Positions 3,001-47,264 of a stretch of DNA of 64,000 bases are shown piece after piece. Below the pieces are notes generated by a model that ran no database searches, was not told where the DNA came from, and saw nothing but the letters and a program-made list of their open reading frames with translations. The DNA is from Macrostomum lignano (taxonomy: Eukaryota). The DNA lies in contig NIVC01000083.1 of assembly GCA_002269645.1 (NCBI GenBank), positions 372,001-436,000 of the forward strand. The letters run 5' to 3'. Both the position numbers and the translations under genes were made by a program. The stretch's first letter is position 1; each line of letters opens with the position of its first letter.

Positions 3001-3240
3001 TGTTTGACCTGGATTCACATATATGTTTGACATGGTGGCTCTTTTATGTTTGACATGGTGGCTTTTTTATGTTTTACATGGTGGCTCTTTAATGTTAGAC
3101 ATGGTGGCTCTTTAATGTTCGACATGGTGGCTCTTTAATGTTCGACATGGTGGCTCTTTAATGGTCGACATGATGGCTCTTTAATGTTCGACATGGTGGC
3201 TCTTTAATGTTTGACATGGTGGCTCTTTAATGTTTGACAT
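1..3240. repeat. 23-bp tandem satellite (GACATGGTGGCTCTTTAATGTTA-type) with higher-order blocks; runs off the window start
   Basis: About 140 diverged 23-bp units. A variant unit (CCTGGATTCACATATATG) recurs at 271, 639, 1950, 2226, 2617 and 3008; spacings of 276, 368 and 391 are 12, 16 and 17 units. Confidence 0.95.
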
Positions 3241-3734
3241 TGTGCTTTTTTGTGTTTAGCATTTGTGTTTTTAAGGTTTTTGAATAAAAAAATCTTTTTG
3301 CACTACTAAGATTCGAACCCAGGTCGCTGCATTAGCAGTCCAGTCTGTTCGCATCTATGCTATCTCTTGTCAATTGGAATACGTGAATTGTGGCCCTTAT
3401 AATTAAATTCTTATAGCAAATCGGTTAGAGTAAAAAGTTATGACATAATCAATTTCTCAGTCAGCCAGTATCAGTGTCAATTTAAGTTAGCAATATTGTT
3501 ACGCAATTTAAATCAAGTTTTGTGTGCATTTGTTCGGCACTGTTTTCAACTGGTTGTGATGTAATCTTTATCACAATTGGAATTCAGTCAGTCAGTTTTT
3601 TCTCTAGCATTCTTACAATGCATTTCAGGTCGAAAGAGCTGCTTGACCTTTGCAAAAAAGCATGTTTTTCGAATATTTAATCCCTTTAATATTGAGCAAT
3701 TTCTTAGCCAAGATGCATGTACCGTCCCAGGAAA

Positions 3735-3852
3735 ATTTCTGATCGAATGGTGCAAGTTTGAAGAAAATCGGTTGAGCCATTTTTTCTGAAATCTATCGCA
3801 TACCTACCTACCTACCTACCCACAGACAACTCATTTTTAGTATATAGGAAGA
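3735..3852 (+). mobile_element. Possible Helitron/DINE-like non-autonomous element 3' portion
   Basis: GCAAGTTTGAAGAAAATCGGTTGAGCCATTT followed by (TACC)n and TTTTAGTATATAG resembles the layout of invertebrate non-autonomous Helitron ends. Recognised by pattern only. Confidence 0.35.
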
Positions 3853-4059
3853 ATATGCACATTTCAGCCAGTCACGCGCAGATATGACAAGACAGCGGGA
3901 GCCGAATATATGTACATTGTCAGCCTGTCCTTTTGAAATATAATTATATTTGGTTTGCGATGTGGGCCTGTCACCCAGTGTGAACCACAACTTTCAGGCA
4001 CTTTCAGTTCAACTCTATTAATTTGTAGATTTGCTTTAAAAAATAATTTAACATATTAA

Positions 4060-6148
4060 ATGGGCAACATTTGCCCCACTTTGAGTCCGGTGAGTTTTCT
4101 TAATTAATTTTAGCGCCTTGGTTTTACTAAAGAGACGAATATGAGACATTGTTTTGAGAATCTAACCTTCAGGGGGTGTGAGATGGGTATGAGATAACAC
4201 TGTGAGATAGGTATGAGATAACACTGTGAGATGGGTATGAGATACCACTGTGAGATGGGTATGAGATACCACTGTGAGATGGGTATGAGATACCACTGTG
4301 AGATGGGTATGAGATAACACTGTGAGATGGGTATGAGATACCACTGTGAGATAGGTATGATATACCACTGTGAGATGGGTATGAGATACCACTGTGAGAT
4401 AGGTATGAGATAACACTGTGACACTGTACATGTAGGTATGAAACTAGTGTCGTGGGGTATGAAATCGAGCCTACACTAAGATAGAAATGAGATAATGAAC
4501 TATATTTATATCATAATTTAATGAACTGTCGAAAATTATTGTTTTACATTCCAGCCCAGCTCTGGTCCCACAGAGCGCAGCGGTCTGATTGCCAACCAGC
4601 ACTCCGCTCCGATCAGACCCCAGCAACCGAGGGATCATCAGACTTATCAAGTCCCGGCTAGGCAGAGAGATCCCAGTGAGCACCACTACACCGCTAAATC
4701 CATTGATAACCGTAGGTCAAAGATTTCAGGTAAGAGAATGCAGCTCAAGTTTCTTGAAATCTTGCAAAACATTTTAATTTCAAACTGGACATAATTTTTC
4801 AGAAGACTCAGATTTGAATTTTTCAAGAATCGGATTGGAGAATTTGGACAAACGGTTAAATGTAAGTGCATGTGAGGTGTGGTGTGGATATGTTAATTGT
4901 CTTTTGTTAAGAAATATTAGCATGGGCTAAATTCTATGTCAATGTACACTGGCTCCTCGGGGCCTTTTCCTCTGGGCAATTAAACACACACCCAACACAC
5001 AATCCATGTACACTACGAGGTGTCCGGCTGTGGCGGTCCGGTTAATTTTGGTGGTGGGGTAAGTTAGATCTACATATGACCGAAAGGTCCGGCAAGGGAG
5101 ACTTGGCTAATTTTGAGTAATTGTGATATAGTTATATGCTGCATGTGAAGGAGAGGAAACCGACTTAGGGCGGTCCGGTTAATTTTGGTGATGGGGTAAG
5201 TTAGATACATGTGACCGAAAGGTCCGGCAAGGGAGACTTGGCTAAATTTTGGGTATTTGTGACATAGTTACATGTGAAGGAGAGGAAACTGATTTAGGGC
5301 GGTTCGGTTAATTTTGGTGGTGGGGTAAGTTAGATACATCTGAACGAAGGGTCCGACTGGTTTTTGCGGTGTTTGATTTCATGTTGGGCTTATGCTTTCG
5401 ATAGGGTGACTTAATAACGAAGTCCTGTATAGTTGGGATATGTTGTTAGATGACCTCGCGATAAGTTTAGATTTTTGACCAAATTAGGTCGACCTAGTTT
5501 AGCGGTTTCTCAACACGCGGTTCAGAATAAGCGTAAAACTGCAACCTAGACCGTTACTCCTGGGGTAAACATCACGTAAAAGGACGAAACGAGCTGTCTA
5601 CCATGTCTGACCATTCACATAAAAATAAATACGTGCACCGTCAAACAAGGAAAACGTTAAAATTAAAGTTCCCCGACGTATTAACGATCTACCTGATCGC
5701 TGAGTTTTACCTGAGTTCTACTTGTTCAACATTTGCTCATTAGGATTACTCATTTGGGGTAGTTTTACGTCGACTGTGTCTCTTGGGACATAGCCACTTC
5801 GACTTCCTCGTGCGGTTCGTGACCTTACTCCGGGAGAAACTGAGAGCGGTAGAGGTTATGCTGGTTTAGTCGAAGGATTTAGAGATGTTAGTCGAGCCGG
5901 CGATGCGGACCCTTGACGCAAGGTTCTGAGGCGGCGATTCCCCTTGCCAACGGTACTGTTGCGTCCTTCTCCTCTGTAAGTCCGCGCTAAACGATCAACG
6001 CAGCGAATTGAGACTCAGCTTGCGAAAGTCACGTTTAAAACAGGCTGACTCCTCTCATCTGCTCGTCGACCCGCCTAAACTCTCCGACCCCTGGCTCCGC
6101 CCACTCGCGGACCGACTCCGGCCCGCCGCCGACGACGAAAGCCTTACT
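4060..6148 (+). CDS. Uncharacterised ~275-aa protein, N-terminus MGNICPTLSP (possible myristoylation/palmitoylation), helical core; last two exons readable only after complementing the sequence
   Basis: Normal-orientation exons: 4060-4089 (MGNICPTLSP|gtgagt), 4555-4729 (ttccag|PSSGP...SKIS|gtaaga), 4803-4861 (ttttcag|EDSDLNFSRIGLENLDKRLN|gtaagt). Exons in the complemented reading: 5425-5611 (ttcag|DISTLYNNLLERYSNLKTGLIQLDQIAKELCAK...QMVQT|gtaagt) and 5772-6148 (tgcag|ADTENPVSVKLKEHAKHW...RRLLLSE*). Phases 0,1,0,1 all match and the total is 828 nt. The last acceptor is the least certain site. Confidence 0.7.
4184..4420. repeat. 24-bp intronic minisatellite (GTGAGATGGGTATGAGATACCACT)
   Basis: About 10 tandem copies in intron 1 of the unknown gene; explains ORFs 4110-4424 and 4162-4431. 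Confidence 0.9.
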
Positions 6149-6149
6149 G

Positions 6150-6430
6150 CTACGAACGCAACAATTATTGTTGCAACAACACAACGAAAACTACGATGAC
6201 AACGAAGACGACGAAAAGACGAAGACTAGAAAGACGACCGAGACAACGAAAACAACGAAGACGACGAAGACGACGAAGACAACGAAGACGAAGACGACGA
6301 AGAAAGTAAAAGAAGACAACGAAGACGACGAAGACAACGAAGACAACGAAGATAATGTACATGTAGAAAGGCGAGAAAGACAACGAAGACTACGAACGAA
6401 AACGACGAAGAGAAAGACAAAGGAGACAAC
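6150..6430. repeat. Degenerate 9-bp-type repeat (reads GAAGCAACA/GAAGCAGCA when reversed) just after the stop of the unknown gene
   Basis: Raw (ACAACGAAG/ACGACGAAG)n; produces ORFs 6165-6483. Confidence 0.75.
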
Positions 6431-6828
6431 GAAGACGATTCGAGACAATTAAAGTCTTCAAGACAACGTAGACAACTAACCACGAAGAAAATAAGATTTA
6501 GCCAACCTCGAACTCGTAGTCCCGATCTTCCCTCACGTGCGGGCCCCCACTAAACGATTAAAAGTGTGGCCGTTGACGAAATGTTAAAGGAAAAGTGAGC
6601 TACGCACGTAGTTACATCTGAAACCACATATAGTCGCATGTCACATGTTACATGTGAGCCCCATCGATTTTAACTAAGAACCAGCTACGTCAGTAATGTA
6701 CGTACACGTAAAACATGACAACTTAGTCAGTTTTAGCTTTTATTAACGCTTTAGTTTATCGTCTACACATGTGTACGTTCAATTTCGTCAAACAAACAAC
6801 AACAATTTGCTCCCACCCTTCGGCCCCC

Positions 6829-7443
6829 GGTATAACGCCTAGCACAATATACATGCGGCCTTTCATAGACCGATATATCATTTCACATGCGGTTATTTCA
6901 TGCGTTTAATTCCCAAGATCATTTAACATGCGGTTATTTTTTACGTACTAATTGTTCGTGTTTTTGATACTTTCTTCGTACGGCTCCGCGCGTAGTGTTT
7001 TTTAATGGCATTTTTTTCATTTTATCTTTTGCATGTACGTAGCAAATTTTTTGTTTTTATTAATCATTTTGTTTCAAAAATGCAAATGATGATAAATTGC
7101 ATGTAAAAATTTTTTCTTGAAATTATATAACGAACTTATAAGTTAAATAACAGTATTGAATCGTTTCTTTGAAGTAACTGATAAATCGCATTAAATGCAT
7201 TACCACAGCATGTAGTTACGAAAACATACGACGCGACTTTCGAACTTGTTCATATCAATTCTTAACATTCGTCTACTAACACGAACCTCCAACATAAAGG
7301 AGGCCAATGCTATCTAAATGCGGTCGGTTTCTTAAACATGCGGTCTACATTCGGTGAATTTCGCAAACATGCGGTCTACATGCGGTCGATTTCGTAAACA
7401 TGCGGCCTTAAAAGGCCGCATATGATGTGGAAGGCGTTATACC
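6829..7443. mobile_element. 615-bp MITE with perfect 12-bp TIRs and an 8-bp TSD (inside the complemented block)
   Basis: Raw TIRs GGTATAACGCCT (6829-6840) and AGGCGTTATACC (7432-7443), flanked on both sides by CGGCCCCC (6821-6828, 7444-7451). Restored reading: TIR CCATATTGCGGA, TSD GCCGGGGG. Subterminal CATGCGG repeats are present. Confidence 0.85.
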
Positions 7444-7631
7444 CGGCCCCCGTTGGGCGCCTAGTCGGGACTTAACCCGAGACGGCGACTCCCCGTGAAG
7501 GTCCCCGGATTCGGGCTCTATGGGTGTACCAACCCGGGGCTGCAGATCCGGTCCCCTTAAAACCCCGATGATTGGGTTTGGATACTATGTTCTGTGGCGG
7601 TTGGGTTTTCACCTTAGTCCCTGCCACGACT

Positions 7632-8141
7632 CTGGCTCAGGTGGGTCCGGTGGGTGGGTCGTCTGTTCAGGAGCCCTCACGCGCTTTTTGTCTTAACCTT
7701 TACTTTTACAACCCATATGATGACTTTCGGCAGGTTCTCGCCCCTTTGGGTCTTCAGAACCTTATACCGAACTGATAACCTCGCTCAGACCTTCCGAACA
7801 TAGGCTCCCGCTCAGAGGATAGTTCTCCATTTTCATCTGTTTTTGGGAGGATATCCCGACGTTCGGTGTTCCCGTAGCGGTTAGGTCGAGTTATAACCCC
7901 CGGTCCGGTTCCCCCCTCCCCGTGTTCCCCGTTCTCCTTTGGCCTGAGTCGGCCAAAAGGGGCTAAGCCCTGCTTGAAGGTTGGGTCCTGAGGTTAAGGA
8001 CAGTCTCTACTCTCGGTTCTGTGTTATCCGTCCCTCTGTTGGTCTCCTCGGTCGTCTACCTGGTTCCGTCCGTTCCACCTGGCCCGTCCATCCCGTCTCG
8101 AGTATTGAGGCTCTTAACCTTCCGAAGATTACCGGTCTATT
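7632..8141 (+). mobile_element. Probable retroelement remnant: 170-codon open frame (146 aa from ATG 7701) seen only in the complemented reading
   Basis: Complement gives MKMLGILLKAVQERGNPEVLEYGLTIGASLEGLYPRASLLSRG...QYWGPGQGGRGTRGKRKP...LLMAR*. The strand is A/G-rich with a G/R-rich stretch like gag-type ORFs; no family recognised. Confidence 0.35.
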
Positions 8142-8994
8142 TTCTTATTTTCGTATTTTCGTTCCCCTATTTTGGCGCGACCCTACGGTCGGGTCTTTTT
8201 TTTCTAACCGTCTTTCCTCCTCGTGGACTTGGGATTGGGCCCCGTGTCGGAGTCCCGACCGTAGTTGACCCGAGATGGCATGTGAAAACACTTACCAGCA
8301 GAAAGGACGTCCCGCCCACGCTGGCCCCCGAGTTCAGAGCAAGATCGGTGCGACGTCAGGTCTAGAGGTTGAGTGAGGTACATGTGGGGGGATTGGGTTC
8401 CGGCTACCGGTTTAATAACCTTACATGCTTTTTTCTTAACCCAATAAAAATCTTATCCGTGTCGGGGAGGCCCCGCCTGGGAATCTTTTAACCCGACCGG
8501 CTTCGGTCCGGTTAGCCTAACGCGTGTTGGGAATCTGTTCGGTGGTCTCTCCGTCGGTCCCATTTTTGTCAGTCTCTGGCAATCTGGCTACGTCAGTAAT
8601 GTACGTACACTTACATGTAAAACATGACAACTTAGTCAGCTTTAGCTTTTATTAACGCTTTAGCTTATCGTCTACACATGTGTAATAATCGATTTATAAT
8701 CGATTGAAAACTAAATGTAGTAAAAATATCTAAAAATATGGACTACTTTTGATAAAATAGTTATAAAGCAAGTACAGAAGTGTTTAAAAGCGTCAAAGCG
8801 TTAGACAACATTGAGATAAATTTGTAAGAGATATTAAGAGGATGATTTTTTTATTCAACGAAAAACATCAAGAGTATATACCGTCTTTCTTTGATGAGTG
8901 TTTTTAGGTACTTTATATAACATTTTAACGTGATTGTGATACACGTGTAACGTGATTGAATTGAAAACGTAGCAAGTTTTTAATGGTGTACTCA

Positions 8995-10118
8995 TGGTAT
9001 CGTGCGAGTGACTATGGTATCGTGTAAGTGACTACGGTATCGTGTGAGTGTGACTACGGTATCGTGTAAGTGACTACGGTATCGTGTAAGTGACTACGGT
9101 ATCGTGTAAGTGACTACGGTATCGTGTAAGTGACTACGGTATCGTGTAAGTGACTACGGTATCGTGTAAGTGACTACGGTATCGTGTAAGTGACTACGGT
9201 ATCGTGTGAGTGTGACTATGGTATCGTGTAAGTGACTACGGTATCGTGTGAGTGACTATGGTATCGTGTAAGTGACTACGGTATCGTGTGAGTGTGACTA
9301 CGGTATCGTGTAAGTGACTACGGTATCGTGTGAGTGTGACTATGGTATCGTGTAAGTGACTACGGTATCGTGTAAGTGACTACGGTATCGTGTAAGTGAC
9401 TACGGTATCGTGTAAGTGACTACGGTATCGTGTGAGTGTGACTACGGTATCGTGTAAGTGACTACGGTATCGTGTGAGTGTGACTATGGTATCGTGTAAG
9501 TGACTACGGTATCGTGTAAGTGACTACGGTATCGTGTAAGTGACTACGGTATCGTGTAAGTGACTACGGTATCGTGTGAGTGTGACTACGGTATCGTGTA
9601 AGTGACTACGGTATCGTGTAAGTGACTACGGTATCGTGTGAGTGTGACTACGGTATCGTGTAAGTGACTACGGTATCGTGTGAGTGTGACTACGGTATCG
9701 TGTAAGTGACTACGGTATCGTGTAAGTGACTACGGTATCGTGTGAGTGTGACTACGGTATCGTGTGAGTGTGACTACGGTATCGTGTAAGTGACTACGGT
9801 ATCGTGTAAGTGACTACGGTATCGTGTAAGTGACTACGGTATCGTGTAAGTGACTACGGTATCGTGTGAGTGTGACTACGGTATCGTGTAAGTGACTACG
9901 TTATCGTGTAAGTGACTATGGTATCGTGAGTGTGACTACGGTATCGTGTAAGTGACTACGGTATCGTGTAAGTGACTACGGTATCGTGTGAGTGTGACTA
10001 CGGTATCGTGTAAGTGACTACGGTATCGTGTAAGTGACTACGGTATCGTGTGAGTGTGACTACGGTATCGTGTAAGTGACTATGGTATCGTGTGAGTGTG
10101 ACTACGGTATCGTGTGAC
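8995..10118. repeat. 20/22-bp tandem array (raw GTGACTACGGTATCGTGTAA; restored CACTGATGCCATAGCACATT)
   Basis: About 54 near-identical units lying between the 3' ends of two convergent genes. The raw unit has 2 CpG; the restored unit has none. Confidence 0.95.
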
Positions 10119-10978
10119 TATTTTAGAATTCAGAAACGGAGACCACGATTTCGGGGACCACGTTGGAGTCGTTTTTAAACAGGTAGGGATTACGTTTAAA
10201 TGAGATAAGTTTATTTACGCGCAAACTTCGAAGGAAAACCATAATTTTTGTATAAACCATATTGTTTTCGTAGCCAAATATCAATTTAAATTTTAACAAA
10301 AATTGTATAAACTGATAAATTGATAGTGAACTTATATTCATTTTTTGTCAGTGTTGAAATCATGTCGACTTCAAACGTTTTCGTTTTGTAACGCTAATAA
10401 GCTTTTTTGTAATAAAGTAAAAAATAAAGCCTTTGTCAAGTCTTTAAAATATATATAAATTTCATGAACCAAGCTGATTTTATTGAGTAGTTATTCCAAA
10501 AAATGCATACTAATTAAGAACGTAGACACTCTCATAAAAAACATTAACACTTTAGGGTATCTTCGTAACGATTAGGTATTATACGTATACGTCAACATCA
10601 TCGTCGTCATTTCAATAACAAATATCAAAAATAATGTACACTTTCAAAGTAGTCTTTTTTTATTTCAAGGCAGTCAGTTAATTGCTACACTAGCATTTTC
10701 AAACCTCCATCCCGTTCCCCCGTCGCCAAAGATAAAGTGTGGTCGGTTAGTCTTACGAAGACCACCACATCTCCCGATCCCGAACAGATTTTCCGTTACA
10801 TGTGCGCCTCACTCCACCCCGACAAGCTAAAAAACGCATGCCCCACCCCCTTAGGAGTCGGTTATTCTTAAGAGCGCGCTTGTTAAAGATGGAGCGTCGA
10901 AGATTTTTCTAGTGTCCTCGGTGAATTTTGTTCTTTGTTATTCTTTTGTAGTCACGGATTTTAGATTAACAAAAAAGA

Positions 10979-13900
10979 AATGTTAGCGAAGGGGTACGCG
11001 AACTACCCGGGTAACTCGTAAGACAGCGTGTGACACAGTTGTAGATCGCCCGGTCGAAACGCTATTAGAAGGAGGAACAACCCGTGCAACTTTTAGGTAG
11101 CGTCTATAAGGAGGACGAATCAGCCCAGGTCGCTGCCCAGGTGTTACGGCTTCCGTGCCTACGTTAGCAGCCCACAGTCGAACAGCCGGGACACTTGCGT
11201 CTCTTAGTGCAAAATTACGAAAGAACATCATTAAAAATGTTTCGTGACAGAATCACTGTCACGTAGTGTTAATGCATGAGTATGTCTCATTCTAGCTGGC
11301 CTCTAAATGTTGGCACGTGTTTGGGCCATGACCATGACCACGTTCCCTACGTCCATATCCCTCATGCGTTCGAATGTGGCCAGCTTGAGCTTTTTAATCC
11401 TGTGAATTTCATGTGTACGTCTGTGTACGTGTTTTTATCCGTTAGCCCCATATCTACACACGTGAACGAACGAAATTTCCTATACCTTATTTAATGTTTT
11501 GCTGTGTCCTTGTGGTTCTACTGTGGTTTATATGTAAATCTAGCACTACGTCGTCGTCCTCGTTGTCATAGTTTTCCTGTTCTTTGTACGTTATAATTAA
11601 CTCTGTCGTAACGGTAATTTTATAACTACGAATAAACATTTTGTAAAAATTTATGAAGTAAATAGGTACAGATATTCATAACTGAATAACCGCCAACCGC
11701 CTCACTCCACCAACCGCCTCCTCACTTCACCAAACGCCTCACTCCATCAACCGCTTCACTCCACCAACCGCCTCCTCACTTCACCAAACGCCTCACTCCA
11801 TCAACCGCCTCACTCCACCAACCGCCTTACTCCACAAACCGCCTCCTCACTCCATCAACCGCCTCACTCCACCAACCGCCTCACTCCATCAACCGCTTCA
11901 CTCCACCAACCGCCTCCTCACTTCACCAAACGCCTCACTCCATCAACCGCTTCACTCCACCAACCGCCTCCTCACTTCACCAAACGCCTCACTCCATCAA
12001 CCGCCTCACTCCACTAACCGCCTCCTCACTTCACCAAACGCCTCACTCCATCAACCGCCTCACTCCACCAACCGCCTTACTCCACAAACCGCCTCCTCAC
12101 TCTATCAACCGCCTCACCCCACCAACCGCATCACTCCACCAACCGCCTCACCCCACCCACCGCCTCACGACCCGATGTTCCTTTTCCATACGTAAATCCC
12201 CGATTAAAACACGGCGTCAAGTCCGACTCTGCAAGCCGTACGCAACAGGATGTGGTCCCGTTTTTTATTGCTGTTACTCCACCCTGTTACTCCTTAATTG
12301 TTTGGCTCCTGACGGCTGTCGAGACCCGAGCCTATTCCTGAGGAGCAGTAACAGCGACCATAACGGCGGAGGAGGCCGTGAACTTATTGACAACGATGTT
12401 TGTTATTGTTTTAGTCAGTTAAACCAACGTTCGTCGTAGAAAAAGTGACTTACTGTTGTGTTAAAAATTTTTTCTCTTAAAGTATTACTCCCAACTGGCG
12501 TTAACTTAAGTTCGTCGTGTCATAAAATGAACGTATCAAAAAAAAAATGCTCATGTACGTTTAATAAGACATCCAAATTTTAGCCTGTACGGAAGTTCGT
12601 TTGTTTTTTCCAGCTTAATTGTAAATATTTTAATTAAAAAACTAAAGACCTATTTCGCAAAGCACAAGTGGCGTTGAATAATGGACTTGAGAGAAGCAGA
12701 GAATACCGACTTCAACATGGTCTTTATCGCGTTTATTCGTTTTGAATCGTAGTCTTTAAGTAAGTTGAGATGAGTATCATTTTGCGTGTCAAAAATTCAT
12801 CGTTTTACACAAGTATGAATGCTTTATAGCTGGTCAAGAAACGCGTAGAGCCGCTACATGAAAAGGAAGAGCAGCACGTCGTCGAAAAACTGCAGAAACT
12901 CCTTCCGGGGTTTAAGCGGAAGCAGTAGGACCTGTCCACTCTTAACTTACGCCGTAATCCGAATGTACCCTGATGACCTCCCTCGACCGTTGACTGTGAG
13001 ACCCTCCGACCGGGTCGTTGACTGTGAGACCCTCCGACCGGGTCGTTGACTCCTAGACCCTACGACCGGGTCGTTGACTGTGAGACCCTCCGACCGGGTC
13101 GTTGAACCCTAGACCCTCCGACCGGGTCGTTGACCCCTAGACCCTCCGACCGGGTCGTTGACTCCTAGACCCTCCGACCGGGTCGTTGACTCCTAGACCC
13201 GCCGACCGGGTCTTTGACTCCTAGACCGTCCGACCGGGTCGTTGACTCCTAGACCCTCCGACCGGGTCGTTGACTCCTAGACCCGCCGACCGGGTCTTTG
13301 ACTCCTAGACCGTCCGACCGGGTCGTTGACTCCTAGACCCGCCGACCGGGTCGTTGGCTGTGAGACTCTCCGACCGGGTCGTTTACTCCTAGACCCTCCG
13401 ACCGGGTCGTTGACTGTGAGACCCTCCGACCGGGTCGTTTACTCCTAGACCCTCCGACCGGGTCGTTGGCTGTGAGACTCTCCGACCGGGTCGTTTACTC
13501 CTAGACCCTCCGACCGGGTCGTTGACTCCTAGACCCTCCGACCGGGTCGTTGGCTGTGAGACTCTCCGACCGGGTCGTTTACTCCTAGACCCTCCGACCG
13601 GGTCGTTGACTGTGAGACCCTCCGACCGGGTCGTTGACTGTGAGACCCTCCGACCGGGTCGTTTACTCCTAGACCCTCCGACCGGGTCGTTGGCTGTGAG
13701 ACTCTCCGACCGGGTCGTTGACTCCTAGACCCTGGCAAAGTTAGGTGTCTCTGCCGATTCGATCGTTCCTTCGAGTTATCATTTAGAATAGTTCGCCTTA
13801 AGTTTCGCACGTAACCACATTTTAACAGACATGACGTGTCGAGGCGTCAGAGTGTCAGTATTTGTCGAACAGCTTGAGGTCAAAGCGTCTCGGCAGTCAC

Positions 13901-16900
13901 AGGTCGAGGACTCGCCGGTGCAGGCAGTTGAGGACCTTGAACAGCAGCAAAGACGGACCCTTTTTGAGCGCGTAGTGGAGCCGTTTGAGCCAGAACAGGT
14001 CGTCTGGCCTGGGCGAACCCAGGAACCAAAACTTCCGCAGGTTGTCAGCCGGCTCTCAAGCGTACAGCAGGGTCATCTGGAGGAGCCTGTACCACGGGTA
14101 GTCGTGGCTCTTCTTGACGACCGTCGCGAGCAGGACCCGCATCGCAACGTTCCGCAGCATCTTCGACATCCGGGTGAGGTGGGCCTAGACGAGTTACGGC
14201 ATCTAAACCGCTTTGTCCGACAGTTGTTTCAGCGGGTAACCGCAGTTGCCAAATCGCAGCGGACAGAGCATGCGCCGGTGAACAAGCAGAAAGAGCGCAA
14301 AAGAACGCAGGGTTTAGAGGGCCTACACTTAAGACCGCAGCGCAAAGCAGTACGCTGCCAACAACTGCCCGCACGGCACGACCTCCTTGAAGCCGTGGAC
14401 TCCCCCAAACCTGCCAAACTGACAAACTCGACTTCGTTAAAAATGTTCGAGCTTTGAAGTAACTAGACAAAATAGTAAGACAATGCGTAAAACAATGCTT
14501 CAGTACTATTTTATCAGCATCTAAGTATTTCGGTTATGGGGGTTGTAGCCTAGTGGTTAGAGCATCGGACTCATGAATTGAAGGTCGGGGGTTCGATTCC
14601 TGATCCCACTGGACTAATTTGTGTCCTTGAGCAGGAGAATTAACTCTGCATCGCTTCAGTTCACCCACAGATAGAATAACTTCTAGTATCTGTGGTTGTA
14701 ATCAATTATTATTATTCTGAGGCAAATAACACGTCGAGATGTGCCATTTCTATGATTTTTAGGCACATTTTATGTACGTTGGATATAAGATTAACATAGA
14801 ATCCTAATTTTCTTAACGAAAAGCTTCATGAATATCAATAGATTGGGTCTCCTTTCTATCAAAAGCGATAACCATTTTTGTGCCGAATAAATGAAAACCT
14901 CCATCTCCGTAGTGTATTTTTCAGTAAAAACTGCCTTCTGAAATATTCCAACAAACGTACATGCAGCTAGCCCACAGGTTCCCCGATGTGAAATTTCGAA
15001 TATTTAAAGTTTCAAGTTACGATACGAAGAAAAGCTCACGGTACAGAGTGCTATTACCTTTGGCTATTAATCAATGAATTTTGAATAATTTTACAAGGAT
15101 ACCTTTTCATCATAGCCGAGCCCCTCCAGCATTTGAGCTTCTCCGGTTGTTAGGCCGGACATCTCTTGCAGGATTATGTCCACCAGCTCGTCGGACCTCT
15201 TGCCTTGGCTCAACTCCTTCCATCTGTCGGCGCCGCCAGAAATATACTCACCGCACCGTTCCCATTCCGGCCTAGGGGTGGAGTGATTGAGTAGACTCAG
15301 TAGATTTGATTGAGTAGACTCAGTAGATTTGATTGAGTAGACTCAGTAGATTTGATTGAGTAGACTCAGTAGATTTGATTGAGTAGACTCAGTAGATTTG
15401 ATTGAGTAGACTCAGTAGATTTGATTGAGTAGACTCAGTAGATTTGATTGAGTAGACTCAGTAGATTTGATTAAGTAGACTCAGTAGATTTGATTGAGTA
15501 GACTCAGTAGATTTGATTGAGTAGACTCAGTCGATTTAATTGAGTAGACTCAGTCGATTTGATTGAGTAGACTCAGTCGATTTGATTGAGTTGACTTAGT
15601 GGATCAGACAAGGTAAACTCTAATTAATTAGTAAAGCAAGATGATTAAAGTCTTATACCTTGGAGTTGCTGTGCCCTTCAGTTGTTCAGCTTCAGTGTAG
15701 TACTGATCCCGTTGCTTCAAAACTTGTTCGTACAGATCTTGAAGGGCTCTGGAATCAAGGAGATCATGTACAAAATAGACTATACGCTGGTATAAAAGTT
15801 TATTGATTACGAATTTTTAGATTTTTGTATAATTTGGACATGTGAAACAGACAAACAATTTCATTTGCTAACTCGGGACGATTGAATTTTTATAAAAGTA
15901 CAATTGTGAGACAACACATTACCGAAACACATTTTGTTATTATGATAAGTGAGAACTCGCTAGATATTTAGCTAAAGTTCATCCTTAAAAGGATACAGCA
16001 GTTGGACTGAAGAGTGAAAAATAACTGGGAAAATTAAACTGGGGTGAAGGGTTGGGGCAATTAAACTGCGGTGAGATGGGTGGGGCAATTAAACAGGGGT
16101 GAGAGGGGTGGGGCAATTAAACTGGGGTGAGATGGGTGGGGCAATTAAACTGGGGTGAGAGGGGTGGGGCAATTAAACTGGGGTGAGAGGGGTGAGGCAA
16201 TTAAACTGGGTGGGAGGGTCGGGGCAATTAAACTGGGGTGGGAGGGGTGGGGCAATTAAACTGGGGTGAGATGGGTAAGGCAATTAAACTGGGGTGAGAT
16301 GGGTAAGGCAATTAAACTGGGGTGAGAGGGGTGGGGCAATTAAACTAGGGTGAGAGGGGTGGCGGAATTAAACTAGGGATAGACAGTCGACCAATCAGAG
16401 TCAAGGAGGAGTTAAATTGAAAACTTGAGGAGATGGAGGGGTAGAGGTCCTGAATTAACTTAAATGCATTTTAACTTTGTACAGTTGACACGATTCTTCC
16501 GTACATACTGGTATGTACACGTACATAAAAACACGCGTTACACGAATGGAAAAGGGTGAACCCAAAATTTTCTAAGATGGTTTGTGCAGTGCTAAACATA
16601 TTCCAACGAAGTGATATCTGCAATATTTGTTGTCCTATACTTGAAGCTCAGTTGTCCATTCGAGTTCGTGATCTCAGCCTCTCGCTGATCAGAAGGGCAG
16701 GTTTGATCATCGTATTTGCTGAAGCTCGATTCCGCGTCCTCAGTTTGAGTTTGACAGTTGCTGAGCTGCCTGAGATTTCCTCTGCGTCTAATTAGTCCGT
16801 TAGCATTAATTAATAAGTATAGCAGTTACCACAGCATTATTGCCTCATAGTCGATTTTCATATATTACTCATCAGTAGTGCATATATAATACAAACTCCA

Positions 16901-19900
16901 AATGCTCGTGCGAGCTACATGAGGGCGAAAATGCAACAGAATAAGCTGACCAGATTTGGGCACCGATTCAAATTTAGAGCGCCGTTGTTATATAAAGTTA
17001 TAGGCTGACTGATTATACAGTTTATACTGGTCAACGATTTGAGGAAAAATAATTTTAACGGTATTGCAATAATCCTGGATTGTTACTTCTTTCTTTTCAG
17101 GGGGTACAACAGTCCCACCTATCTCATTGTCAGGCATGTGTGCCTCAGGGGTTGGCCCTATGAACGAGCCATAGATTACTACGGTTTAGACCCCCCCCCC
17201 TGAGCTATACCTTGTACTTTGAACCTTATCTTAATTAGTTTTACACACCTGTGCTCATCAATGAGTTTATCCGTATCTCGCTTATAATTTCCGTACTCCT
17301 CCTCCATGCTGGCGAACTGGGCGGACACAGTTTCGAATTGGCGCCGCGGCACCACGTCGGAATAGTCCGCCTCCATGCGGGTGATCCGGTCGATCAGGTC
17401 GGCCTGCGACTTCTTGGCCTGCGGGTTTGGTTTTAACAAATGTAACTATGAGAATTATATTCTCTTGTTGTCAAGGGATTTCGGTGAGAAAGATAAATGG
17501 GATTGGGGATTAGAAAATTAGGATAATTAGGAGGTAGGGGACTTTAGGGGTAGATTGAAAAAAACGGGAGATTAGGGAACTCAGGGGAATGGGAAATTTT
17601 AGTGTTTGGTTTTTAGAATTTTCTGAGGATTAGAGAAGTTACAGTTTTGAGATGGTAAATTTAACGGAAAATTAGGAGGAGGTTGGGGAATTTTGGAGGA
17701 TATTGGGGATCGGAGAACTAATTTCCCCGAATTTAGGAGGAGGTTGGGGAATTTAGGAGGATATTGGGGAACTTAGGAGGATATTGGGGAATTTAGGGGT
17801 AATCAGGGAATTTAGGAGGATATTGGGGAACTTAGGAGGAGATCGGGGAATTTAGGAGGATATTGGGGAACTTAGGAGGATATTGGGGAATTTAGGAGGA
17901 GATCGGGGAATTTAGGAAGAGATCGGGGAATTTAGGAAGAGATCGGGGAATTAAGAGCCTTCCACACCTGGTTGAGTCCGATTCGCAGCTGCACAGGGTC
18001 CTCGCCGCTGTCCTCAGAATCGGCAGCCTTCTTAAAGATGCTCATGTCCTCCTGTTGCGAGCGGAGCTCGTTCATGTCGGCTACTAGCAGCTTCCTGCTG
18101 TCGGCCTCGTCTCGATAGCGTTGCTGCATATCGGTGAGTTCGGCTTTCAGAGTCTCGACCTGCTGCTCCAGATCGTGCTGCTGTTCGTGCATTTTGTCGA
18201 TTTTCTCTCTCAGGCCGAGGTTGAGAGAGCGGAGCTGCCGCATTTCTGGGGGAGAGGGCGGTAATTTGGTATGGTTGTGAGCTCAACTGTTGTATTTGTG
18301 TCCGAGTTCTCTAGATTTGAGGCAATGTCCGTGTTCTCTAGATTTGAGGCAGTGTCCGTGTTCTCTAGATTTGAGGCAGTGTCCGTGTTCTCTAGATTTG
18401 AGGCAGTGTCCGAGTTCTCTAGATTTGAGACAGTGTCCGTGTTCTCTAGATTTGAGGCAGTGTCCGTGTTCTCTAGATTTGAGGCAGTGTCCGTGTTCTC
18501 TAGATTTGAGGCATTGTCCGAGTCCTTTATATTTGAGGCGTTGTCCAAGTTCTCCAGATTTGTGGTGTCAGTATTCTCTAGATTTGAGGCATTGTCCGAG
18601 TTCTTTAGATTTGAGGCAGTGTCCGTGTTCTTTAGATTTGTCGCGGTGTCCGTGTTCTCTAGATTTGAGGCATTGTCCGTGTTCTCTAGATTTGAGGCAG
18701 TGTCCGTGTTCTCTAGATTTGAGGCATTGTCCGTGTTCTCTAGATTTGAGGCATTGTCTGAGTCCTTTATGTTTGAGGCGTTGTCCAAGTTCTCCAGATT
18801 TGTGGTGTCAGTATTCTCTAGATTTGTGGTGTCAGTATTCACTATATTTGTGGTGTCAGTATTCTCTAGATTTGTGGTGTCAGTATTCACTAGATTTGTG
18901 GCGTCAGTATTCACTATATTTGTGGTGTCAGTATTCTCTAGATTTGTGGTGTCAGTATTCACTAGATTTGTGGCGTCAGTATTCACTATATTTGTGGTGT
19001 CAAATCTCAAGATTCATTGTGTCAATGTTCGCTAGATTTGTGCTGTCAAATCTCTAGACTTGTGGTGTCACTGTTTTCTAGATTTGTGTTGTCAGTATTT
19101 TCTAGATCTTTGGTATCAGCATTCTCTAGATTTGTGTTGTCAGTATTTTCTAGATCTTTGGTATCAGCATTCTCTAGGTTTGTGTTGTCAGTATTTTCTA
19201 GATCTTTGGTATCAGCATTCTCTAGGTTTGTGTTGTCAGTATTTTCTAGATCTTTGGTATCAGCATTCTCTAGATTTGTGTTGTCAGTATTTTCTAGATC
19301 TTTGGTATCAGCATTCTCTAGATTTGTGTTGTCAGTATTTTCTAGATCTTTGGTATCAGCATTCTCTAGGTTTGTGTTGTCAGTATTTTCTAGATCTTTG
19401 GTATCAGCATTCTCTAGGTTTGTGTTGTCAGTATTTTCTAGATCTTTGGTATCAGCATTCTCTAGATTTGTGTTGTCAGTATTTTCTAGATCTTTGGTAT
19501 CAGCATTCTCTAGATTTGTGTTGTCAGTATTTTCTAGATCTTTGGTATCAGCATTCTCTAGATTTGTGTTGTCAGTATTTTCTAGATCTTTGGTATCAGC
19601 ATTCTCTAGGTTTGTGTTGTCAGTATTTTCTAGATCTTTGGTATCAGCATTCTCTAGGTTTGTGTTGTCAGTATTTTCTAGATCTTTGGTATCAGCATTC
19701 TCTAGATTTGTGTTGTCAGTATTTTCTAGATCTTTGGTATCAGCATTCTCTAGATTTGTGTTGTCAGTATTTTCTAGATCTTTGGTATCAGCATTCTCTA
19801 GATTTGTGTTGTCAGTATTTTCTAGATCTTTGGTATCAGCATTCTCTAGATTTGTGTTGTCAGTATTTTCTAGATCTTTGGTATCAGCATTCTCTAGATT

Positions 19901-21296
19901 TGTGTTGTCAGTATTTTCTAGATCTTTGGTATCAGCATTCTCTAGATTTGTGTTGTCAGTATTTTCTAGATCTTTGGTATCAGCATTCTCTAGATTTGTG
20001 TTGTCAGTATTTTCTAGATCTTTGGTATCAGCATTCTCTAGATTTGTGTTGTCAGTATTTTCTAGATCTTTGGTATCAGCATTCTCTAGATTTGTGTTGT
20101 CAGTATTTTCTAGATCTTTGGTATCAGCATTCTCTAGATTTGTGTTGTCAGTATTTTCTAGATCTTTGGTATCAGCATTCTCTAGATTTGTGTTGTCAGT
20201 ATTTTCTAGATCTTTGGTATCAGCATTCTCTAGATTTGTGTTGTCAGTATTTTCTAGATCTTTGGTATCAGCATTCTCTAGATTTGTGTTGTCAGTATTT
20301 TCTAGATCTTTGGTATCAGCATTCTCTAGATTTGTGTTGTCAAATCTCTATAGATTAGCGTTGTCAGTGTTCTCTAGATTTGTGTTGTCAAATCTCTAGA
20401 TTAGCGGTGTCCGTGCTCTCTAGAAGTGGTGGCCATCAAGATTTTCTTGTTCTTTAGAAAAGGATTTCTGTATTCTCTAGAGTGATTTCATCTGACGGTC
20501 GGTTAAAGAGTTTCATGGCAGGCAGTTCAGTGAAGAAATTCACAGGGGAGCAAGTCCGGCAGTCCGGCAGCCCAGCAGGGTGCGCACTTATATCGACTAA
20601 AAAACTGCTAAGATCGCTAATATGAGATGAGATGTGTATCAGAATCTTTAAGATGAAGCTCCCTAGTACCGCAAATCTCAGTATTAAAAACTGGGCACAT
20701 GCAAGACCGTACTGAGTTTTAGGATTTTTCAAAAGCTCACCGTCCTTCTCCTCAGCCCGGATTGCCATGATCTTCTGGTCGCACTCCTGGCTCAGCGTCC
20801 ACAGCATCTCCTTCATGGGCTCGAGTCGGCGGATCTCGTCGCGCAGATGAGCGATCATCATCTCGTACTCGCGCTTGATGGCCGCCAACAACGGCTTGTA
20901 GGTTTTAAACGCTTCGATGAGGTATTCGAACACTTCACGGTGAATCTGCAGCCGAATAGTGCTGGCAGCCACCTCCGTGACATTGTGCGACTTCAATTCG
21001 CGTTTGAGATAGCCTTCGAGCTGTTCAAGAAATTTCGGTTTCGGTAGAAGATTCGGCCGACCAGCTGATTCGTCGTCAATGACAACCAGGCGACTGTCTT
21101 TGGTGAGCAGCACCTGGCTGTCGGGCACCGTGCGGCAGGAGGCGTGAGCCGGCCAGGTGTCCAACAGTCCGCTGGCCTCGGCGCCCGAGTTCAATGGTTT
21201 GGTTAGCGAAGGCGGAGGTAAGACGTACTTTTGGCCCTGCACCTCGTAAGTCATGGACTTGTCGGCGGCTGCTGTGGCGTTGCCAGCCGCTGCCAT
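10979..21296 (-). CDS. TSNAXIP1: Translin-associated factor X-interacting protein 1-like (coiled coil plus C-terminal EF-hand-like region), ~707-737 aa
   Basis: Normal minus-strand exons: 21296-20741 (LPKPKFLEQLEGYLKREL...EVFEYLIEAFKTYKPLLAAIKREYE), 18245-17968, 17418-17249, 15748-15659 (...TATPR), 15271-15103 (PEWERC...RWKELSQGKRSDELVDIIL...GLGYDEK). Exons read as plain reverse of the given strand: 14397-13855 (VPKFLQHGTPVNNRRMTKR...VEWAYSFYDALQRY...DAFKTKDPSGSGLLDKTEF), 12928-12822 (DDEGEFGAF), optional 12394-12305, and 11189-10979 (ADKLTPDDCIRAFGIVDP...RMGKRL*). All junctions are GT-AG with matching phases. Confidence 0.9.
11690..12170. repeat. 17/20-bp intronic minisatellite (raw AACCGCCTCACTCCACC)
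   Basis: Tandem array in the last intron of TSNAXIP1, inside the complemented block. Confidence 0.9.
12985..13732. repeat. 28-bp intronic minisatellite (raw GACCCTCCGACCGGGTCGTTGACTCCTA)
   Basis: About 27 units; the exact complement (not reverse complement) of the unit at 35905-36597. Confidence 0.95.
14539..14670 (+). mobile_element. tRNA-derived SINE (A box, B box, conserved core)
   Basis: GGGGTTGTAGCCTAGTGGTTAGAGC (A box), GGTTCGATTCC (B box), then TGTGTCCTTGAGC...GCTTCAGTTCACCCA resembling the Deu/Nin-type SINE core. Related copies at 29209-29350 and 37466-37740. Normal polarity, so it bounds the complemented block on the right. Confidence 0.75.
15281..15600. repeat. 23-bp minisatellite (GATTGAGTAGACTCAGTAGATTT)
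   Basis: About 14 copies starting about 8 nt from the TSNAXIP1 acceptor at 15272-15273. Confidence 0.9.
16035..16375. repeat. 28-bp G-rich minisatellite (GGGGCAATTAAACTGGGGTGAGAGGGGT)
   Basis: About 12 diverged copies, intronic. Confidence 0.9.
17690..17952. repeat. 20-bp purine-rich minisatellite (GGGGAATTTAGGAGGATATT)
   Basis: Tandem copies in TSNAXIP1 intron 2. Confidence 0.85.
18300..20420. repeat. Compound 27/24/48-bp array filling TSNAXIP1 intron 1
   Basis: 27-bp units (TTCTCTAGATTTGAGGCAGTGTCCGTG) grade into 24-bp units and then ~27 near-identical 48-bp dimers (~19060-20340). Explains ORFs 18210-20399. Confidence 0.95.
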
Positions 21297-22548: not shown

Positions 22549-25500
22549 ATGTTGTCCACCGACGGTGCTAATAAAAAGCCACTAATGCCACTTGCCCAGT
22601 CTGACTACATGACAAATAATACCACAACCAATACTAACAGTTCATACTGTGGCACCGGATTTGCTGATTTTCACCCAGTTAACGTTGACTTTGACAATTT
22701 TTTGCCCCAAGGTCAAAGTCAGACGTCGCCATCATCCATGTTTCCAGCTGAGTGGAATGGCCATGCTCAGGAAGGCTCTATCTTTTCAGATGCAGTTTTT
22801 AATCATGTTGGTAATGGTAACTACCCACAGCCACAGGTCAGCAGCTCAAGTTTCATCATGAGCTCCACTAAGCCAGGTCAATATGGTTGCATAGATTTTG
22901 AATCTCTTCAGCAGAAGATTTCTCTAAAGAAGCAATCATTAGACATTCTTCAGGGTGTTATCCCTGACCCTCTTGGTCTAGAAGCAAATCATGAAAAAAA
23001 GGCATATATGACCAACACAGAGCGCATTCAAGTGCCTTCTTCTGACCATGTAGCAGAAATTGTTGGAAAAAATGGTAATTATTTTTTATTATGATTTTTG
23101 AGCTTTTGGTTCTAGATCTGAGATGATTTCTTTGGTTTTTCATTTGTATAAATTTATTAGACCTAATAATATTAAATTAAACTATTAGGCCTAGTTAATT
23201 TGTATTTTGCATTATTGTTCTAAAATAAGCTTTTGTAACTTATGCTTAAAATAGACTAATAGACCTAAGTCTTAAACAGACATGTGCAACCTCCAAAATT
23301 CAGTTGGCCATGCAACTTAGTATTAACAAAAATGTGACATAGTTTTTGGCTAAAAATGCGACTTACATGTAAAAAACTCTAAAGGAAAATTACCGCAACG
23401 TTGGGTAAATGGCAGGAGTAACTCTGACTGTCTTATTAAGCCAAAATGCCTTATCAGCTACTTTGTACTACTACTTGTGTGTTTTTTTTTGGGTGGGCAT
23501 TTTTGCGACTTCCTTGGTTGGCTGCCAAATCAGTCGGCCAGGTTGGCCAACTCGGTTGACTGTTGTGCATGTATGGTCTAAAATAAAGAATTTTTATTTA
23601 TAAATTTAGATAAATAAGTGCTAGCCTGCTATACTTAGGCCTAGCTACCTAGTTAAGTTTATTACTTTGCTTGCATTGTTTTATCATTTAATAAATAAAA
23701 ATATATTATTATTTGTCTATAATTTTATTTTTAGGCAGTGCTTATCTCCATGGTACTATAGAAATAATTTCTATCTTATTCCAACAATACTGTGGGAATA
23801 ATTTTCTGCTTATCCATATGGCACACTGATGAGATAGCTGCCCTATCTTTTACATATGCCATGGGAATAATTTTCTGCTTATCCGCATGGGACACTGACA
23901 AGAAAGCTGCCCTATATTCTATATATGCCGTGAGAATAATTTTCTGCTTATCCGCACGGCACACTGACGAGATAGTCGCCATATCTTCTATATATATATA
24001 TGCTATACCTGAATAGTATATAGCTTTTTGAAAGGGAATTTAAATTAAAGATACTAAAAAGCTGTTGATCTGGATCAACACCATGACCAGCATTTTTTTG
24101 CATAAAAAAGCCATTAAATCTTTACTTCTATTAAACAAATTATCAAGCAAAGTTGTTATATTGCACTTAAACCATAAGTACTAAACTAAATTATTCCCAC
24201 GGCATATGTAAAAGATGGGCCAACTATTTTGTCAGTATGCTATGCAGATAAGCAGAAAATTATTCCTATGGTACCATGGGGATAAGCACTGCCTTATTTT
24301 TATTTGATCAATTTTTAAATTAGATACTTGATAATGAATCTAATAGAGTTTTTACATAATTTATTATTAAAAAAATATTCCTTGAAGTTTTAGTAGCAAT
24401 CTTTCTTTATCCCTCTGCCTTTTCCTAATTCTAAGAATGTATTTTTCTAATTAAAAATGATTTTTTTCAATTAGGCCTATTGAAATCTTATTGGCATTCT
24501 TTTGTTTTATAATCCCTAAGCAACCATATTCAAACTGCTCAACTACCAAAATAGGTGTGTACAGTTGGTGTGCATCACTCCAAAGCAATAGTGTGCATGT
24601 ATATTTAGCATGCACTTCATAGAATCATGCAGAAAAAATTGTGTGAAGTAAAAAAAGATACAAAAATATTCATTTTAAGCAAAAAATTCAAGCTTTCTAG
24701 GGTTTTTAAGTTCATAATAAAATATTTAAACAAATATTTGTGTGTATCAATTTTCAGCAGGGAATAAATAGTATTGTCAAAAAAGCAGAAAAATTAACCA
24801 AATTATTTTTAAAAAAAAGTTTCATTATGCAATACAAAAAAGGTTTTTATTATCACAATGTGAAAAAGGTCATTTATTGTCATAACACCATCATAGTTTT
24901 AAGAATAGGTGTGCACTCAAGTTTTTTTAGTGTGCATTTGCAATTATTCAATTTTTGTTTGCGTATGCACTTAGCATGATCTAGACTATGGCCAAGTAGG
25001 TCCAATTTTGTATCACAATCCCCATTAAAAAAGAGTCAACATTGATATAGGACATTGACTCTAGTATAACTAAAAATTACATTTCATATTTTTTTCTTTG
25101 AAACTCACTTCCAAGTCAATTTAAATTGTCATTACAATCCATTGAAACATAGGCGTAGCATAGTTACAGAAGTATGTAGCTTATATTCACTTTTGTTATG
25201 CAATCATTTAAATTATAAAATTATATGTAGATGATTGCAAGATGAAGCTGAACTCACTTTCATCTTATGATCACCCCAAAATATAAAATGTACTTCCATT
25301 TAACTAGGGGATCATAAGGCAAAAATGAGTGGGGGCTACCTAGAATTGGTTTGCAGTTTTTGCTGCTTTTGGTGGCTTTGCAGCTTTCTATTTGTGGACA
25401 TTATAGAGGCTAAAATGATAGGAAAAGCCAGGATATATAATCTTCTAGCTTAACATAAATAGCCTGAAAGTGTTAATAAGCCAATGTTGCATTTTGTTAT

Positions 25501-46899: not shown

Positions 46900-46937
<38 letters not shown>

Positions 46938-47110: not shown

Positions 47111-47192
<82 letters not shown>

Positions 47193-47264
47193 ATCTCTCT
47201 CTTCCTCTCTGTCTCTCTCTCTGTCTCTCTCTCTATCTCTCTCTTCCTCTCTGTCTCTCACTCC

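What the first reader, a model, noticed from the sequence alone, without database searches (positions are those of the whole stretch)
10979..15271. TSNAXIP1 crosses the right junction and finishes in reverse-only text
The normal exon 15271-15103 ends ...LEGLGYDEK|gtatcc (phase 0). The expected continuation VPKFLQHGTPVNNRRMTKR appears at 14397 only when the + strand is read backwards without complementing, preceded by ccccctcag. A 543-nt exon follows with an EF-hand-like loop (DAFKTKDPSGSGLLDKTEF), then DDEGEFGAF and a terminal exon ending RMGKRL*. Exon order and direction are preserved, which shows the block is not reversed relative to its flanks. An automated annotation would call this gene truncated.
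Basis: partly seen in the sequence, partly recalled or inferred. Interest (0 to 1): 0.75.

Follow-up and report, generated by a model that had tools for sequence, protein, structure and literature searches.

The report
Complement-only assembly error truncating flatworm TSNAXIP1
A 9.5-kb stretch of a public Macrostomum lignano (flatworm) genome contig was written as the complement without being reversed, which hides the last three exons of an otherwise intact TSNAXIP1 gene and made the public annotation call it truncated; it is a data error, not biology.

Summary
The window is a verbatim slice of GenBank contig NIVC01000083.1 (Macrostomum lignano, assembly Mlig_3_7), positions 372001-436000. 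Window 5015-14535 (9,521 bp) is written complement-only in place, which is the same as reverse-only text of the minus strand. Both junctions are sharp to the base. When the block is complemented, the window runs colinearly through both junctions with two paralogous contigs of the same assembly.

TSNAXIP1 lies on the minus strand in 8 exons. Exons 1-5 (21296-15103) are in normal text, and exons 6-8 (14397-13855, 12928-12822, 11189-10979) are in the block. All introns are GT-AG. The stitched 707-aa protein differs by one residue (Y17F, exon 1) from the annotated paralogue PAA91648.1. It aligns end to end with TSNAXIP1 orthologues.

The error is in the public record itself. The record is 100.000% identical to the raw window over 26,170 bp, including the block.

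No known biological process makes complement-only DNA. The best explanation is a half-applied strand flip during assembly or post-processing. The step that caused it is unknown. Interest is low as biology, but the error is worth reporting to curators.

The parts
5015..14535 (.). Complement-only block (9,521 bp), equal to NIVC01000083.1:377015-386535. The text is the base-by-base complement of the true + strand, not reversed. This is equivalent to reverse-only text of the minus strand.
   Evidence: blastn of the raw window against paralogous contig L001 matches 3849-5014 and 14536 onward. The complement-only window matches 5015-14535, with L001 coordinates continuous at 26027|26026 and 16011|16010. 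After in-place complementing, single HSPs cross both junctions. In the 20-mer table, the block shares 7600/7735 20-mers with L001 only as reverse-only, and 0 under the other three transformations. The CG/GC and CA+TG/AC+GT dinucleotide asymmetries flip only in this interval.
5014..5015 (.). Left junction (normal | complement-only). On the paralogous contig it falls inside a predicted 275-aa gene with no Pfam domain (about window 4060-6150, + strand).
   Evidence: Base-level comparison and gene list of L001. L002 starts at window 5127, so this junction is not covered by the fetched piece of the window's own record.
14535..14536 (.). Right junction (complement-only | normal), inside intron 5 of TSNAXIP1 and 3 nt from a tRNA-like element.
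   Evidence: Base-level comparison. It is present identically in public record NIVC01000083.1.
20741..21296 (-). TSNAXIP1 exon 1 (ATG at 21296), containing the TSNAXIP1_N domain. Normal text.
   Evidence: Pfam PF15739, E = 1.4e-25, 90.2 bits. Exon model; tblastn.
17968..18245 (-). TSNAXIP1 exon 2 (coiled-coil region). Normal text.
17249..17418 (-). TSNAXIP1 exon 3. Normal text.
15659..15748 (-). TSNAXIP1 exon 4 (30 aa; skipped in the older 677-aa UniRef models). Normal text.
15103..15271 (-). TSNAXIP1 exon 5, the last exon in normal text. It ends ...GLGYDEK|gtatcc. The public CDS for this copy stops at 15127, inside this exon.
13855..14397 (-). TSNAXIP1 exon 6 (543 nt, 181 aa, EF-hand-like pair). 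Readable only as reverse-only text.
   Evidence: tblastn on the corrected window gives E = 2e-117 and 99.5% identity to PAA91648.1. Orthologues from a mollusc, amphioxus and a mammal align here.
12822..12928 (-). TSNAXIP1 exon 7 (DDEGEFGAF...). Reverse-only text.
10979..11189 (-). TSNAXIP1 exon 8, ending ...RMGKRL with stop TAA at 10981-10979. Reverse-only text.
12988..13733 (.). 28-bp satellite in intron 6, inside the block. It serves as an internal control, because the same satellite family occurs in normal text at 35890-36606.
   Evidence: The two arrays share 52/166 14-mers only when the block copy is complemented, and 0 as written, as reverse-complement or as reverse-only.

Best explanation
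The block is a text-level error in the deposited assembly. For a 9,521-bp stretch of contig NIVC01000083.1, only one of the two operations of reverse-complementation was applied. Either an opposite-strand piece was reversed but not complemented, or an in-place piece was complemented but not reversed; the two give the same text. The underlying genome is normal here. TSNAXIP1 copy g3 is an intact 8-exon, 707-aa gene, and its exons 6-8 fall in the garbled text. No aligner or gene finder reads DNA in that way, so the public annotation stopped in exon 5 and labelled the gene partial.

Shown here: the transformation, its exact limits, the intact gene, and the presence of the error in the public record together with the truncated annotation.

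Inferred: that the cause is software or handling. The published pipeline was Canu 1.4, then Pilon 1.20, then SSPACE 3.0. Which step produced the error is unknown.
For: 1. The transformation and its limits. Flanks match two paralogous contigs as ordinary reverse-complement. The block matches only as reverse-only (7600/7735 and 3502/7735 20-mers; 0 otherwise).
2. Window-internal evidence that needs no outside data: the dinucleotide asymmetry flip and the satellite control.
3. The gene is intact. It has 8 exons, all GT-AG, and 707 aa, with one substitution against PAA91648.1 and two against PAA65610.1. It aligns at full length to TSNAXIP1 orthologues. The exons in the block are recovered by tblastn only after correction.
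4. The error is in the public record. L002 (NIVC01000083.1:377127-403296) is identical to raw window 5127-31296, with 26,170/26,170 bases matching and no gaps. The record's own annotation gives a 413-aa partial protein that is an exact prefix of the stitched protein. It calls no gene in the block, whereas both paralogous contigs carry full 707-aa genes.
5. An older, independently built gene model (UniRef A0A1I8HM83, 677 aa) carries this copy's allele (Y17, R55, V688) and the complete C-terminus.
6. From established knowledge, DNA strands are antiparallel. Inversion, recombination, replication and transposition can yield reverse-complements but never complement-only sequence.
Against: No raw reads could be examined, so the claim that the molecule is normal rests on paralogues, on an older gene model and on biochemistry.

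The published pipeline contains no step known to me that complements without reversing.

Substitution and indel rates against the paralogue are no worse inside the block than outside. This neither dates the error relative to polishing nor points to a culprit.

The left junction was not seen in the fetched part of the record itself.
Confidence: 0.94

Rival explanations
1. The block was introduced when the window was cut or prepared for this scan (a planted or accidental edit), and the public record is normal.
For: A complement-only block is what a simple script would produce. I cannot inspect GenBank directly, only the copy held by the tools.
Against: The DNA fetched for NIVC01000083.1 is identical to the raw window through the block and the right junction. 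Independently of any DNA text, the 2017 public annotation truncates this copy in the last exon before the junction (413 aa, partial) and calls nothing in the block. Both sister contigs have full genes.
Confidence: 0.03
2. This is a real chromosomal inversion, or an ordinary misoriented segment (reverse-complement), in this paralogous copy.
For: Inversions and misorientations are the common kind of strand anomaly in draft assemblies of this repeat-rich neopolyploid genome.
Against: This was tested directly. The block shares 0/7735 20-mers with either paralogue as written or as reverse-complement. blastn on both strands finds no HSP of 300 bp or more in 5015-14535 for the raw text. Exon order is preserved, and paralogue coordinates are continuous across the junctions. 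The block ends carry no inverted repeats longer than 11 nt.
Confidence: 0.005
3. Copy g3 of TSNAXIP1 is a genuinely truncated paralogue or pseudogene, as the public annotation implies.
For: The public product PAA91620.1 is 413 aa and labelled partial. Neopolyploids do lose duplicate genes.
Against: Exons 6-8 are present at the expected positions, in order and in frame, with canonical splice sites. They are 100% identical in protein to copy g2 once the text is complemented. A decayed remnant would not be perfect, and it would not be complement-only.
Confidence: 0.01
4. The deposited text is a faithful record of real DNA made by 'swinger' polymerisation, meaning systematic A<->T + C<->G exchange as proposed by Seligmann.
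For: The transformation and the sharp switches are exactly those described for 'swinger DNA' in GenBank, for example the 16S gene of the Kamimuria wangi mitogenome (PMC4942731).
Against: No polymerase is known to do this. By that author's own account, only the complement rule has ever been seen in DNA records, and that is the one rule a strand-handling slip produces. The block keeps perfect coding capacity for a protein it could not express. Two sister copies and an older model of the same allele are normal.
Confidence: 0.002

Closest known systems
TSNAXIP1 (translin-associated factor X-interacting protein 1), including paralogues BOX15_Mlig004790g1 (PAA65610.1) and g2 (PAA91648.1) in the same assembly
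   Same: The TSNAXIP1_N domain is present. The length is 707 aa, with 1-2 residue differences from g2 and g1. Identity to named orthologues across Metazoa is 35-45% over the full length. A C-terminal EF-hand-like pair is present. In mouse the gene is needed for sperm head formation and male fertility (PMC10304756).
   Different: Nothing biological differs. Only the deposited text of exons 6-8 and the resulting 413-aa 'partial' annotation (PAA91620.1) are different.
'Swinger' A<->T + C<->G sequences reported in GenBank (Seligmann; e.g. 16S rDNA in the Kamimuria wangi mitogenome)
   Same: The text transformation is identical (complement without reversal), embedded with sharp switches in otherwise regular sequence.
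   Different: Those cases were interpreted as products of an unusual polymerase state. Here sister contigs, an older gene model and the truncated annotation point to a record error. This case is nuclear, 9.5 kb long, and cuts through two genes.
Ordinary assembly misorientation or inversion errors
   Same: A contiguous segment has the wrong strand sense, flanked by correct sequence, and it breaks gene models.
   Different: A misorientation is a reverse-complement and stays alignable and annotatable on the other strand. This block aligns to nothing on either strand, so standard QC by alignment sees it as unrelated sequence, and reads cannot map to it.

Membership tests
TSNAXIP1 protein family | N-terminal TSNAXIP1_N domain (Pfam PF15739) above the curated cut-off | tested here: met
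   90.2 bits against a cut-off of 27, E = 1.4e-25, residues 94-189 of exon 1.
TSNAXIP1 protein family | Colinear full-length similarity to named orthologues, including the C-terminal half encoded in the block | tested here: met
   109 hits. For example, Liolophura gives E = 1e-176, 45% identity and 98% coverage. Orthologues align to exons 6-8 only on the corrected text.
TSNAXIP1 protein family | C-terminal EF-hand pair | tested here: inconclusive
   EF-hand_7 scores 27 bits (cut-off 30) and EF-hand_1 scores 23.7 bits (cut-off 25.4). There is a weak calmodulin match in the PDB, E = 0.002. UniRef names the paralogues 'EF-hand domain-containing protein'.
Complement-only (A<->T + C<->G) block in a sequence record | Matches homologous normal sequence only after base-by-base complementing without reversal | tested here: met
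Complement-only (A<->T + C<->G) block in a sequence record | Sharp single-base switches to regular sequence on both sides, with no gap, duplication or loss | tested here: met
   Junctions are at 5014|5015 and 14535|14536, and paralogue coordinates are continuous.
Complement-only (A<->T + C<->G) block in a sequence record | Absent from the physical DNA (which would make it a record error rather than a real molecule) | not testable with these tools
   This needs raw reads or PCR.
Chromosomal inversion / misoriented contig segment | The segment matches the reference or paralogue as its reverse-complement | tested here: not met
   0/7735 shared 20-mers as written or as reverse-complement. No blastn HSP on either strand.

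The most novel reading that the evidence does not exclude
The most novel reading is that the deposited text is true, and that one of the three paralogous copies carries 9.5 kb of DNA synthesised with systematic A<->T + C<->G exchange ('swinger' replication).

A less exotic and more likely reading is also not excluded, at roughly 0.15. On this reading the block is not a one-off slip but the product of a reproducible fault in a widely used assembly, polishing or scaffolding step or script. Further complement-only blocks would then sit undetected in this and other public assemblies and would truncate gene models.
Probability: 0.002. Interest if true: 0.95.

Novelty: not a real feature. Interest (0 to 1): 0.2.

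Why it matters
As biology it does not matter. The gene is an ordinary, intact TSNAXIP1 paralogue.

As data quality it has some value:

- A public reference contig of a model flatworm contains 9.5 kb that aligns to nothing on either strand.
- The error removes 294 aa (414-707) from one annotated protein (PAA91620.1).
- It hides part of a second predicted gene.
- It would distort copy-number, paralogue and read-coverage analyses at this locus.
- It is invisible to QC that only considers forward and reverse-complement matches.

A k-mer reversal-asymmetry statistic found the block from the sequence alone. The same statistic, or a complement-only self-alignment, could be run over whole assemblies.

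Tried and rejected
- Word-indexed homologue search with only the 237 aa spanning the junction found nothing. The full-length query worked.
- I tried to date the error relative to Illumina polishing by comparing substitution and indel rates against the paralogue inside and outside the block. An apparent difference came from a variant cluster at 30.5-31.7 kb. Without it, the rates are about 1.0 per kb inside and about 1.7 per kb outside, and homopolymer indels are alike. The result is inconclusive.
- I looked for inverted repeats at the two block ends, which could hint at an inversion-prone structure that was 'fixed' badly. Nothing exceeded 11 nt.
- I looked for other complement-only stretches. 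There are none in the rest of the window, where the only other negative 1-kb bins are slight and lie in simple or tandem repeats such as the (AGTT)n at 55508-56146. There are none in 58 kb of the two paralogous contigs.
- A literature search for complement-only or reverse-only errors in assemblies found nothing relevant. Only the 'swinger' literature describes the pattern.
- The assembly paper's methods list no step that would explain the error. The 2023 re-analysis notes errors in Mlig_3_7 but not this kind.
- ARAGORN finds no tRNA at the junction-adjacent element. Rfam gives a marginal tRNA hit.
- One tblastn run was accidentally made with all 109 retrieved proteins and produced unreadable output. 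It was redone cleanly.
Full report
**1. What the sequence shows**

On the minus strand an exon runs from 15271 to 15103 and ends ...LEGLGYDEK, followed by the donor gtatcc. Nothing downstream on either strand continues it.

Reading the + strand text backwards without complementing from 14397 gives VPKFLQHGTPVNNRRMTKR..., preceded by ccccctcag. This stays open for 543 nt, down to 13855, and is followed by gtgaga. Read the same way:
- an exon at 12928-12822 starts DDEGEFGAF;
- an exon at 11189-10982 ends RMGKRL, with TAA at 10981-10979.

Together with four upstream exons in normal text (21296-20741, 18245-17968, 17418-17249, 15748-15659), the model has 8 exons and compatible phases. All seven introns are GT-AG, and the product is 707 aa.

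**2. The extent and nature of the anomalous text**

Ordinary double-stranded DNA has f(XY) close to f(revcomp XY), but not close to f(YX). In this window CG < GC and CA+TG > AC+GT everywhere except about 5-14 kb, where both relations flip. A 4-mer log-likelihood of "forward versus letter-reversed", trained on the rest of the window, is negative in the nine 1-kb bins from 5001 to 13001. Elsewhere it is positive, apart from three slightly negative bins that lie in simple or tandem repeats.

A satellite gives an internal control. The 28-bp array at 12988-13733 shares 14-mers with the array of the same family at 35890-36606 only when complemented without reversal (52/166, against 0 for the other three transformations).

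**3. Identity of the gene and of the organism**

Exon 1 carries Pfam TSNAXIP1_N (90.2 bits against a cut-off of 27). Exon 6 has a sub-threshold EF-hand pair, with a weak calmodulin match in the PDB.

The stitched protein retrieves 109 relatives:
- The best is a 707-aa Macrostomum lignano protein (BOX15_Mlig004790g2, PAA91648.1), reported at 100% identity and coverage.
- Next come named TSNAXIP1 proteins from molluscs, annelids, echinoderms, cephalochordates, cnidarians and vertebrates, at 33-45% identity over 94-100% of the query.

Exact comparison shows a single difference from g2, Y17F, in exon 1. The 286 residues encoded by the anomalous text are identical.

tblastn of g2 and of mollusc, amphioxus and mammalian orthologues finds only residues up to about 422-450 of each query (aa 422 for g2) on the raw window. 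It finds the remainder only after the block is complemented. In mouse, TSNAXIP1 is needed for sperm head formation and male fertility (PMC10304756).

**4. Exact junctions**

The g2 gene lies on NIVC01000082.1 (locus L001).
- The raw window aligns to it at 3849-5014 and from 14536 onward.
- The complement-only window aligns at 5015-14535.
- L001 coordinates are continuous at both switches, 26027|26026 and 16011|16010.

With the block complemented in place, single HSPs run through both junctions (3849-10115 and 8986-19622).

A table of shared 20-mers makes the point cleanly:
- The flanks match the paralogue's gene strand only as reverse-complement (975/1013 and 7264/7511).
- The block matches only as reverse-only (7600/7735).
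- All other transformations give 0-1.

The third copy, g1 on NIVC01001635.1 (L003), is more diverged but behaves the same way.

The block is therefore window 5015-14535 (9,521 bp), complemented in place. The right junction lies in intron 5 of TSNAXIP1. The left junction lies, by homology, inside a 275-aa predicted gene without Pfam domains.

An inversion is excluded. The block does not match as a reverse-complement, and there are no inverted repeats at its ends.

**5. Where the error lives**

The 90% cluster of g2 contains a third NCBI entry, BOX15_Mlig004790g3, "partial", 413 aa (PAA91620.1). It is an exact prefix of the stitched protein.

Its contig, NIVC01000083.1, was fetched around the gene as L002. 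It is identical to the raw window from 5127 to 31296, with 26,170 of 26,170 bases matching and no gaps. This includes 9.4 kb of the block and the right junction. The window is therefore NIVC01000083.1:372001-436000, and the block is record 377015-386535.

The record's CDS starts at the same ATG (window 21296) and stops at 15127, inside exon 5. No gene is called in the block. Both sister contigs carry full 707-aa genes. The annotation is independent of the DNA text served by the tools, so the error predates the 2017 annotation and was not added to the window.

An older model, UniRef A0A1I8HM83 (677 aa), equals the stitched protein minus the 30 residues of exon 4. It carries this copy's allele combination (Y17, R55, V688). 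This shows the allele with a complete C-terminus in an independent gene build.

**6. Explanation**

No replication, recombination, inversion or transposition event can yield a complement-only segment, because the strands of DNA are antiparallel (established knowledge). Coding sequence that is perfect only when read in a chemically meaningless way cannot be under selection in that form.

The best explanation is a half-applied reverse-complement on an interval, or on a read-sized piece of about 9.5 kb, somewhere between assembly and submission. The published pipeline was Canu 1.4, Pilon 1.20 (with Illumina and RNA-seq), then SSPACE 3.0 (PMC5730564). None of these steps is known to me to do this, so the culprit is unknown.

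Substitution and indel rates against the paralogue are similar inside and outside the block. I cannot say whether the flip came before or after polishing.

A later study confirms the three-copy structure of Mlig_3_7 and says that it contains errors. It does not describe this kind (PMC10733133).

**7. Comparison with what is known**

The gene is a known, annotated family member. The text pattern equals Seligmann's "swinger" rule A<->T + C<->G, reported in GenBank DNA records such as the 16S gene of the Kamimuria wangi mitogenome and interpreted there as biology (PMC4942731). That paper notes that this is the only rule ever seen in DNA records, which is what strand-handling slips would produce.

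A search for descriptions of such errors in genome assemblies found none.

**8. Verdict**

- The feature is an artefact of a public record, not a property of the genome.
- Interest as biology is low.
- There is practical value in correcting NIVC01000083.1 and PAA91620.1, and in screening assemblies for complement-only blocks.

Noticed in passing
window 4060-6150 (+ strand), across the left junction 5014|5015: On the paralogous contig a 275-aa gene with no Pfam domain is called here (L001 24893-26982). In this window it is cut by the left junction. No annotation for this stretch of the window's own record was fetched, because L002 starts at window 5127. It is probably a second gene model lost to the same error. 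After correction, open frames of 84-141 aa appear.
   Followed up: partly
window 14539-14608 (+): A tRNA-like element sits in TSNAXIP1 intron 5, 3 nt to the right of the junction. Rfam tRNA scores 31.4 bits (cut-off 29) with a damaged T-arm, and ARAGORN does not call it. It is probably a tRNA-derived repeat or pseudogene. It is also present at the same place in paralogue L001.
   Followed up: partly
window 15103-15127: The public CDS of copy g3 stops at 15127, which is 24 nt (8 codons) before the true exon-5 donor rather than at it. A possible reason is that RNA-seq-based transcript models lose coverage near a junction whose partner exon cannot be aligned.
   Followed up: no
window 15659-15748: The older 677-aa UniRef models of this gene (A0A1I8HM83, A0A1I8I4E0) lack exactly the 30 residues of exon 4. 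This is either an alternative isoform or a model error in the earlier annotation.
   Followed up: partly
window 22549-30005 (+): The neighbouring KH-domain gene (Pfam KH_1) is annotated at 566 aa here, 567 aa on the g1 contig, but 469 aa on the g2 contig. The gene models differ between paralogous copies.
   Followed up: no
window 10-3244, 8996-10115, 18298-20390, 46903-48635, 59167-59974, 62615-64000 and others: The tandem-repeat load is very heavy, with 42 TRF rows at score 400 or more. Examples are a 3.2-kb 23-bp satellite, 1.7 kb of (CT)n, (GTCT)n, and satellites inside TSNAXIP1 introns whose copy number differs between the three paralogous contigs. The gene spans 10.3 kb here, against 9.6 kb and 8.6 kb on the other two contigs.
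   Followed up: partly
window 30500-31700 versus L001: A cluster of substitutions and small indels separates copies g3 and g2 here (about 50 variant positions in 1.2 kb). The rest of the 28-kb alignment has about 1-2 per kb.
   Followed up: no
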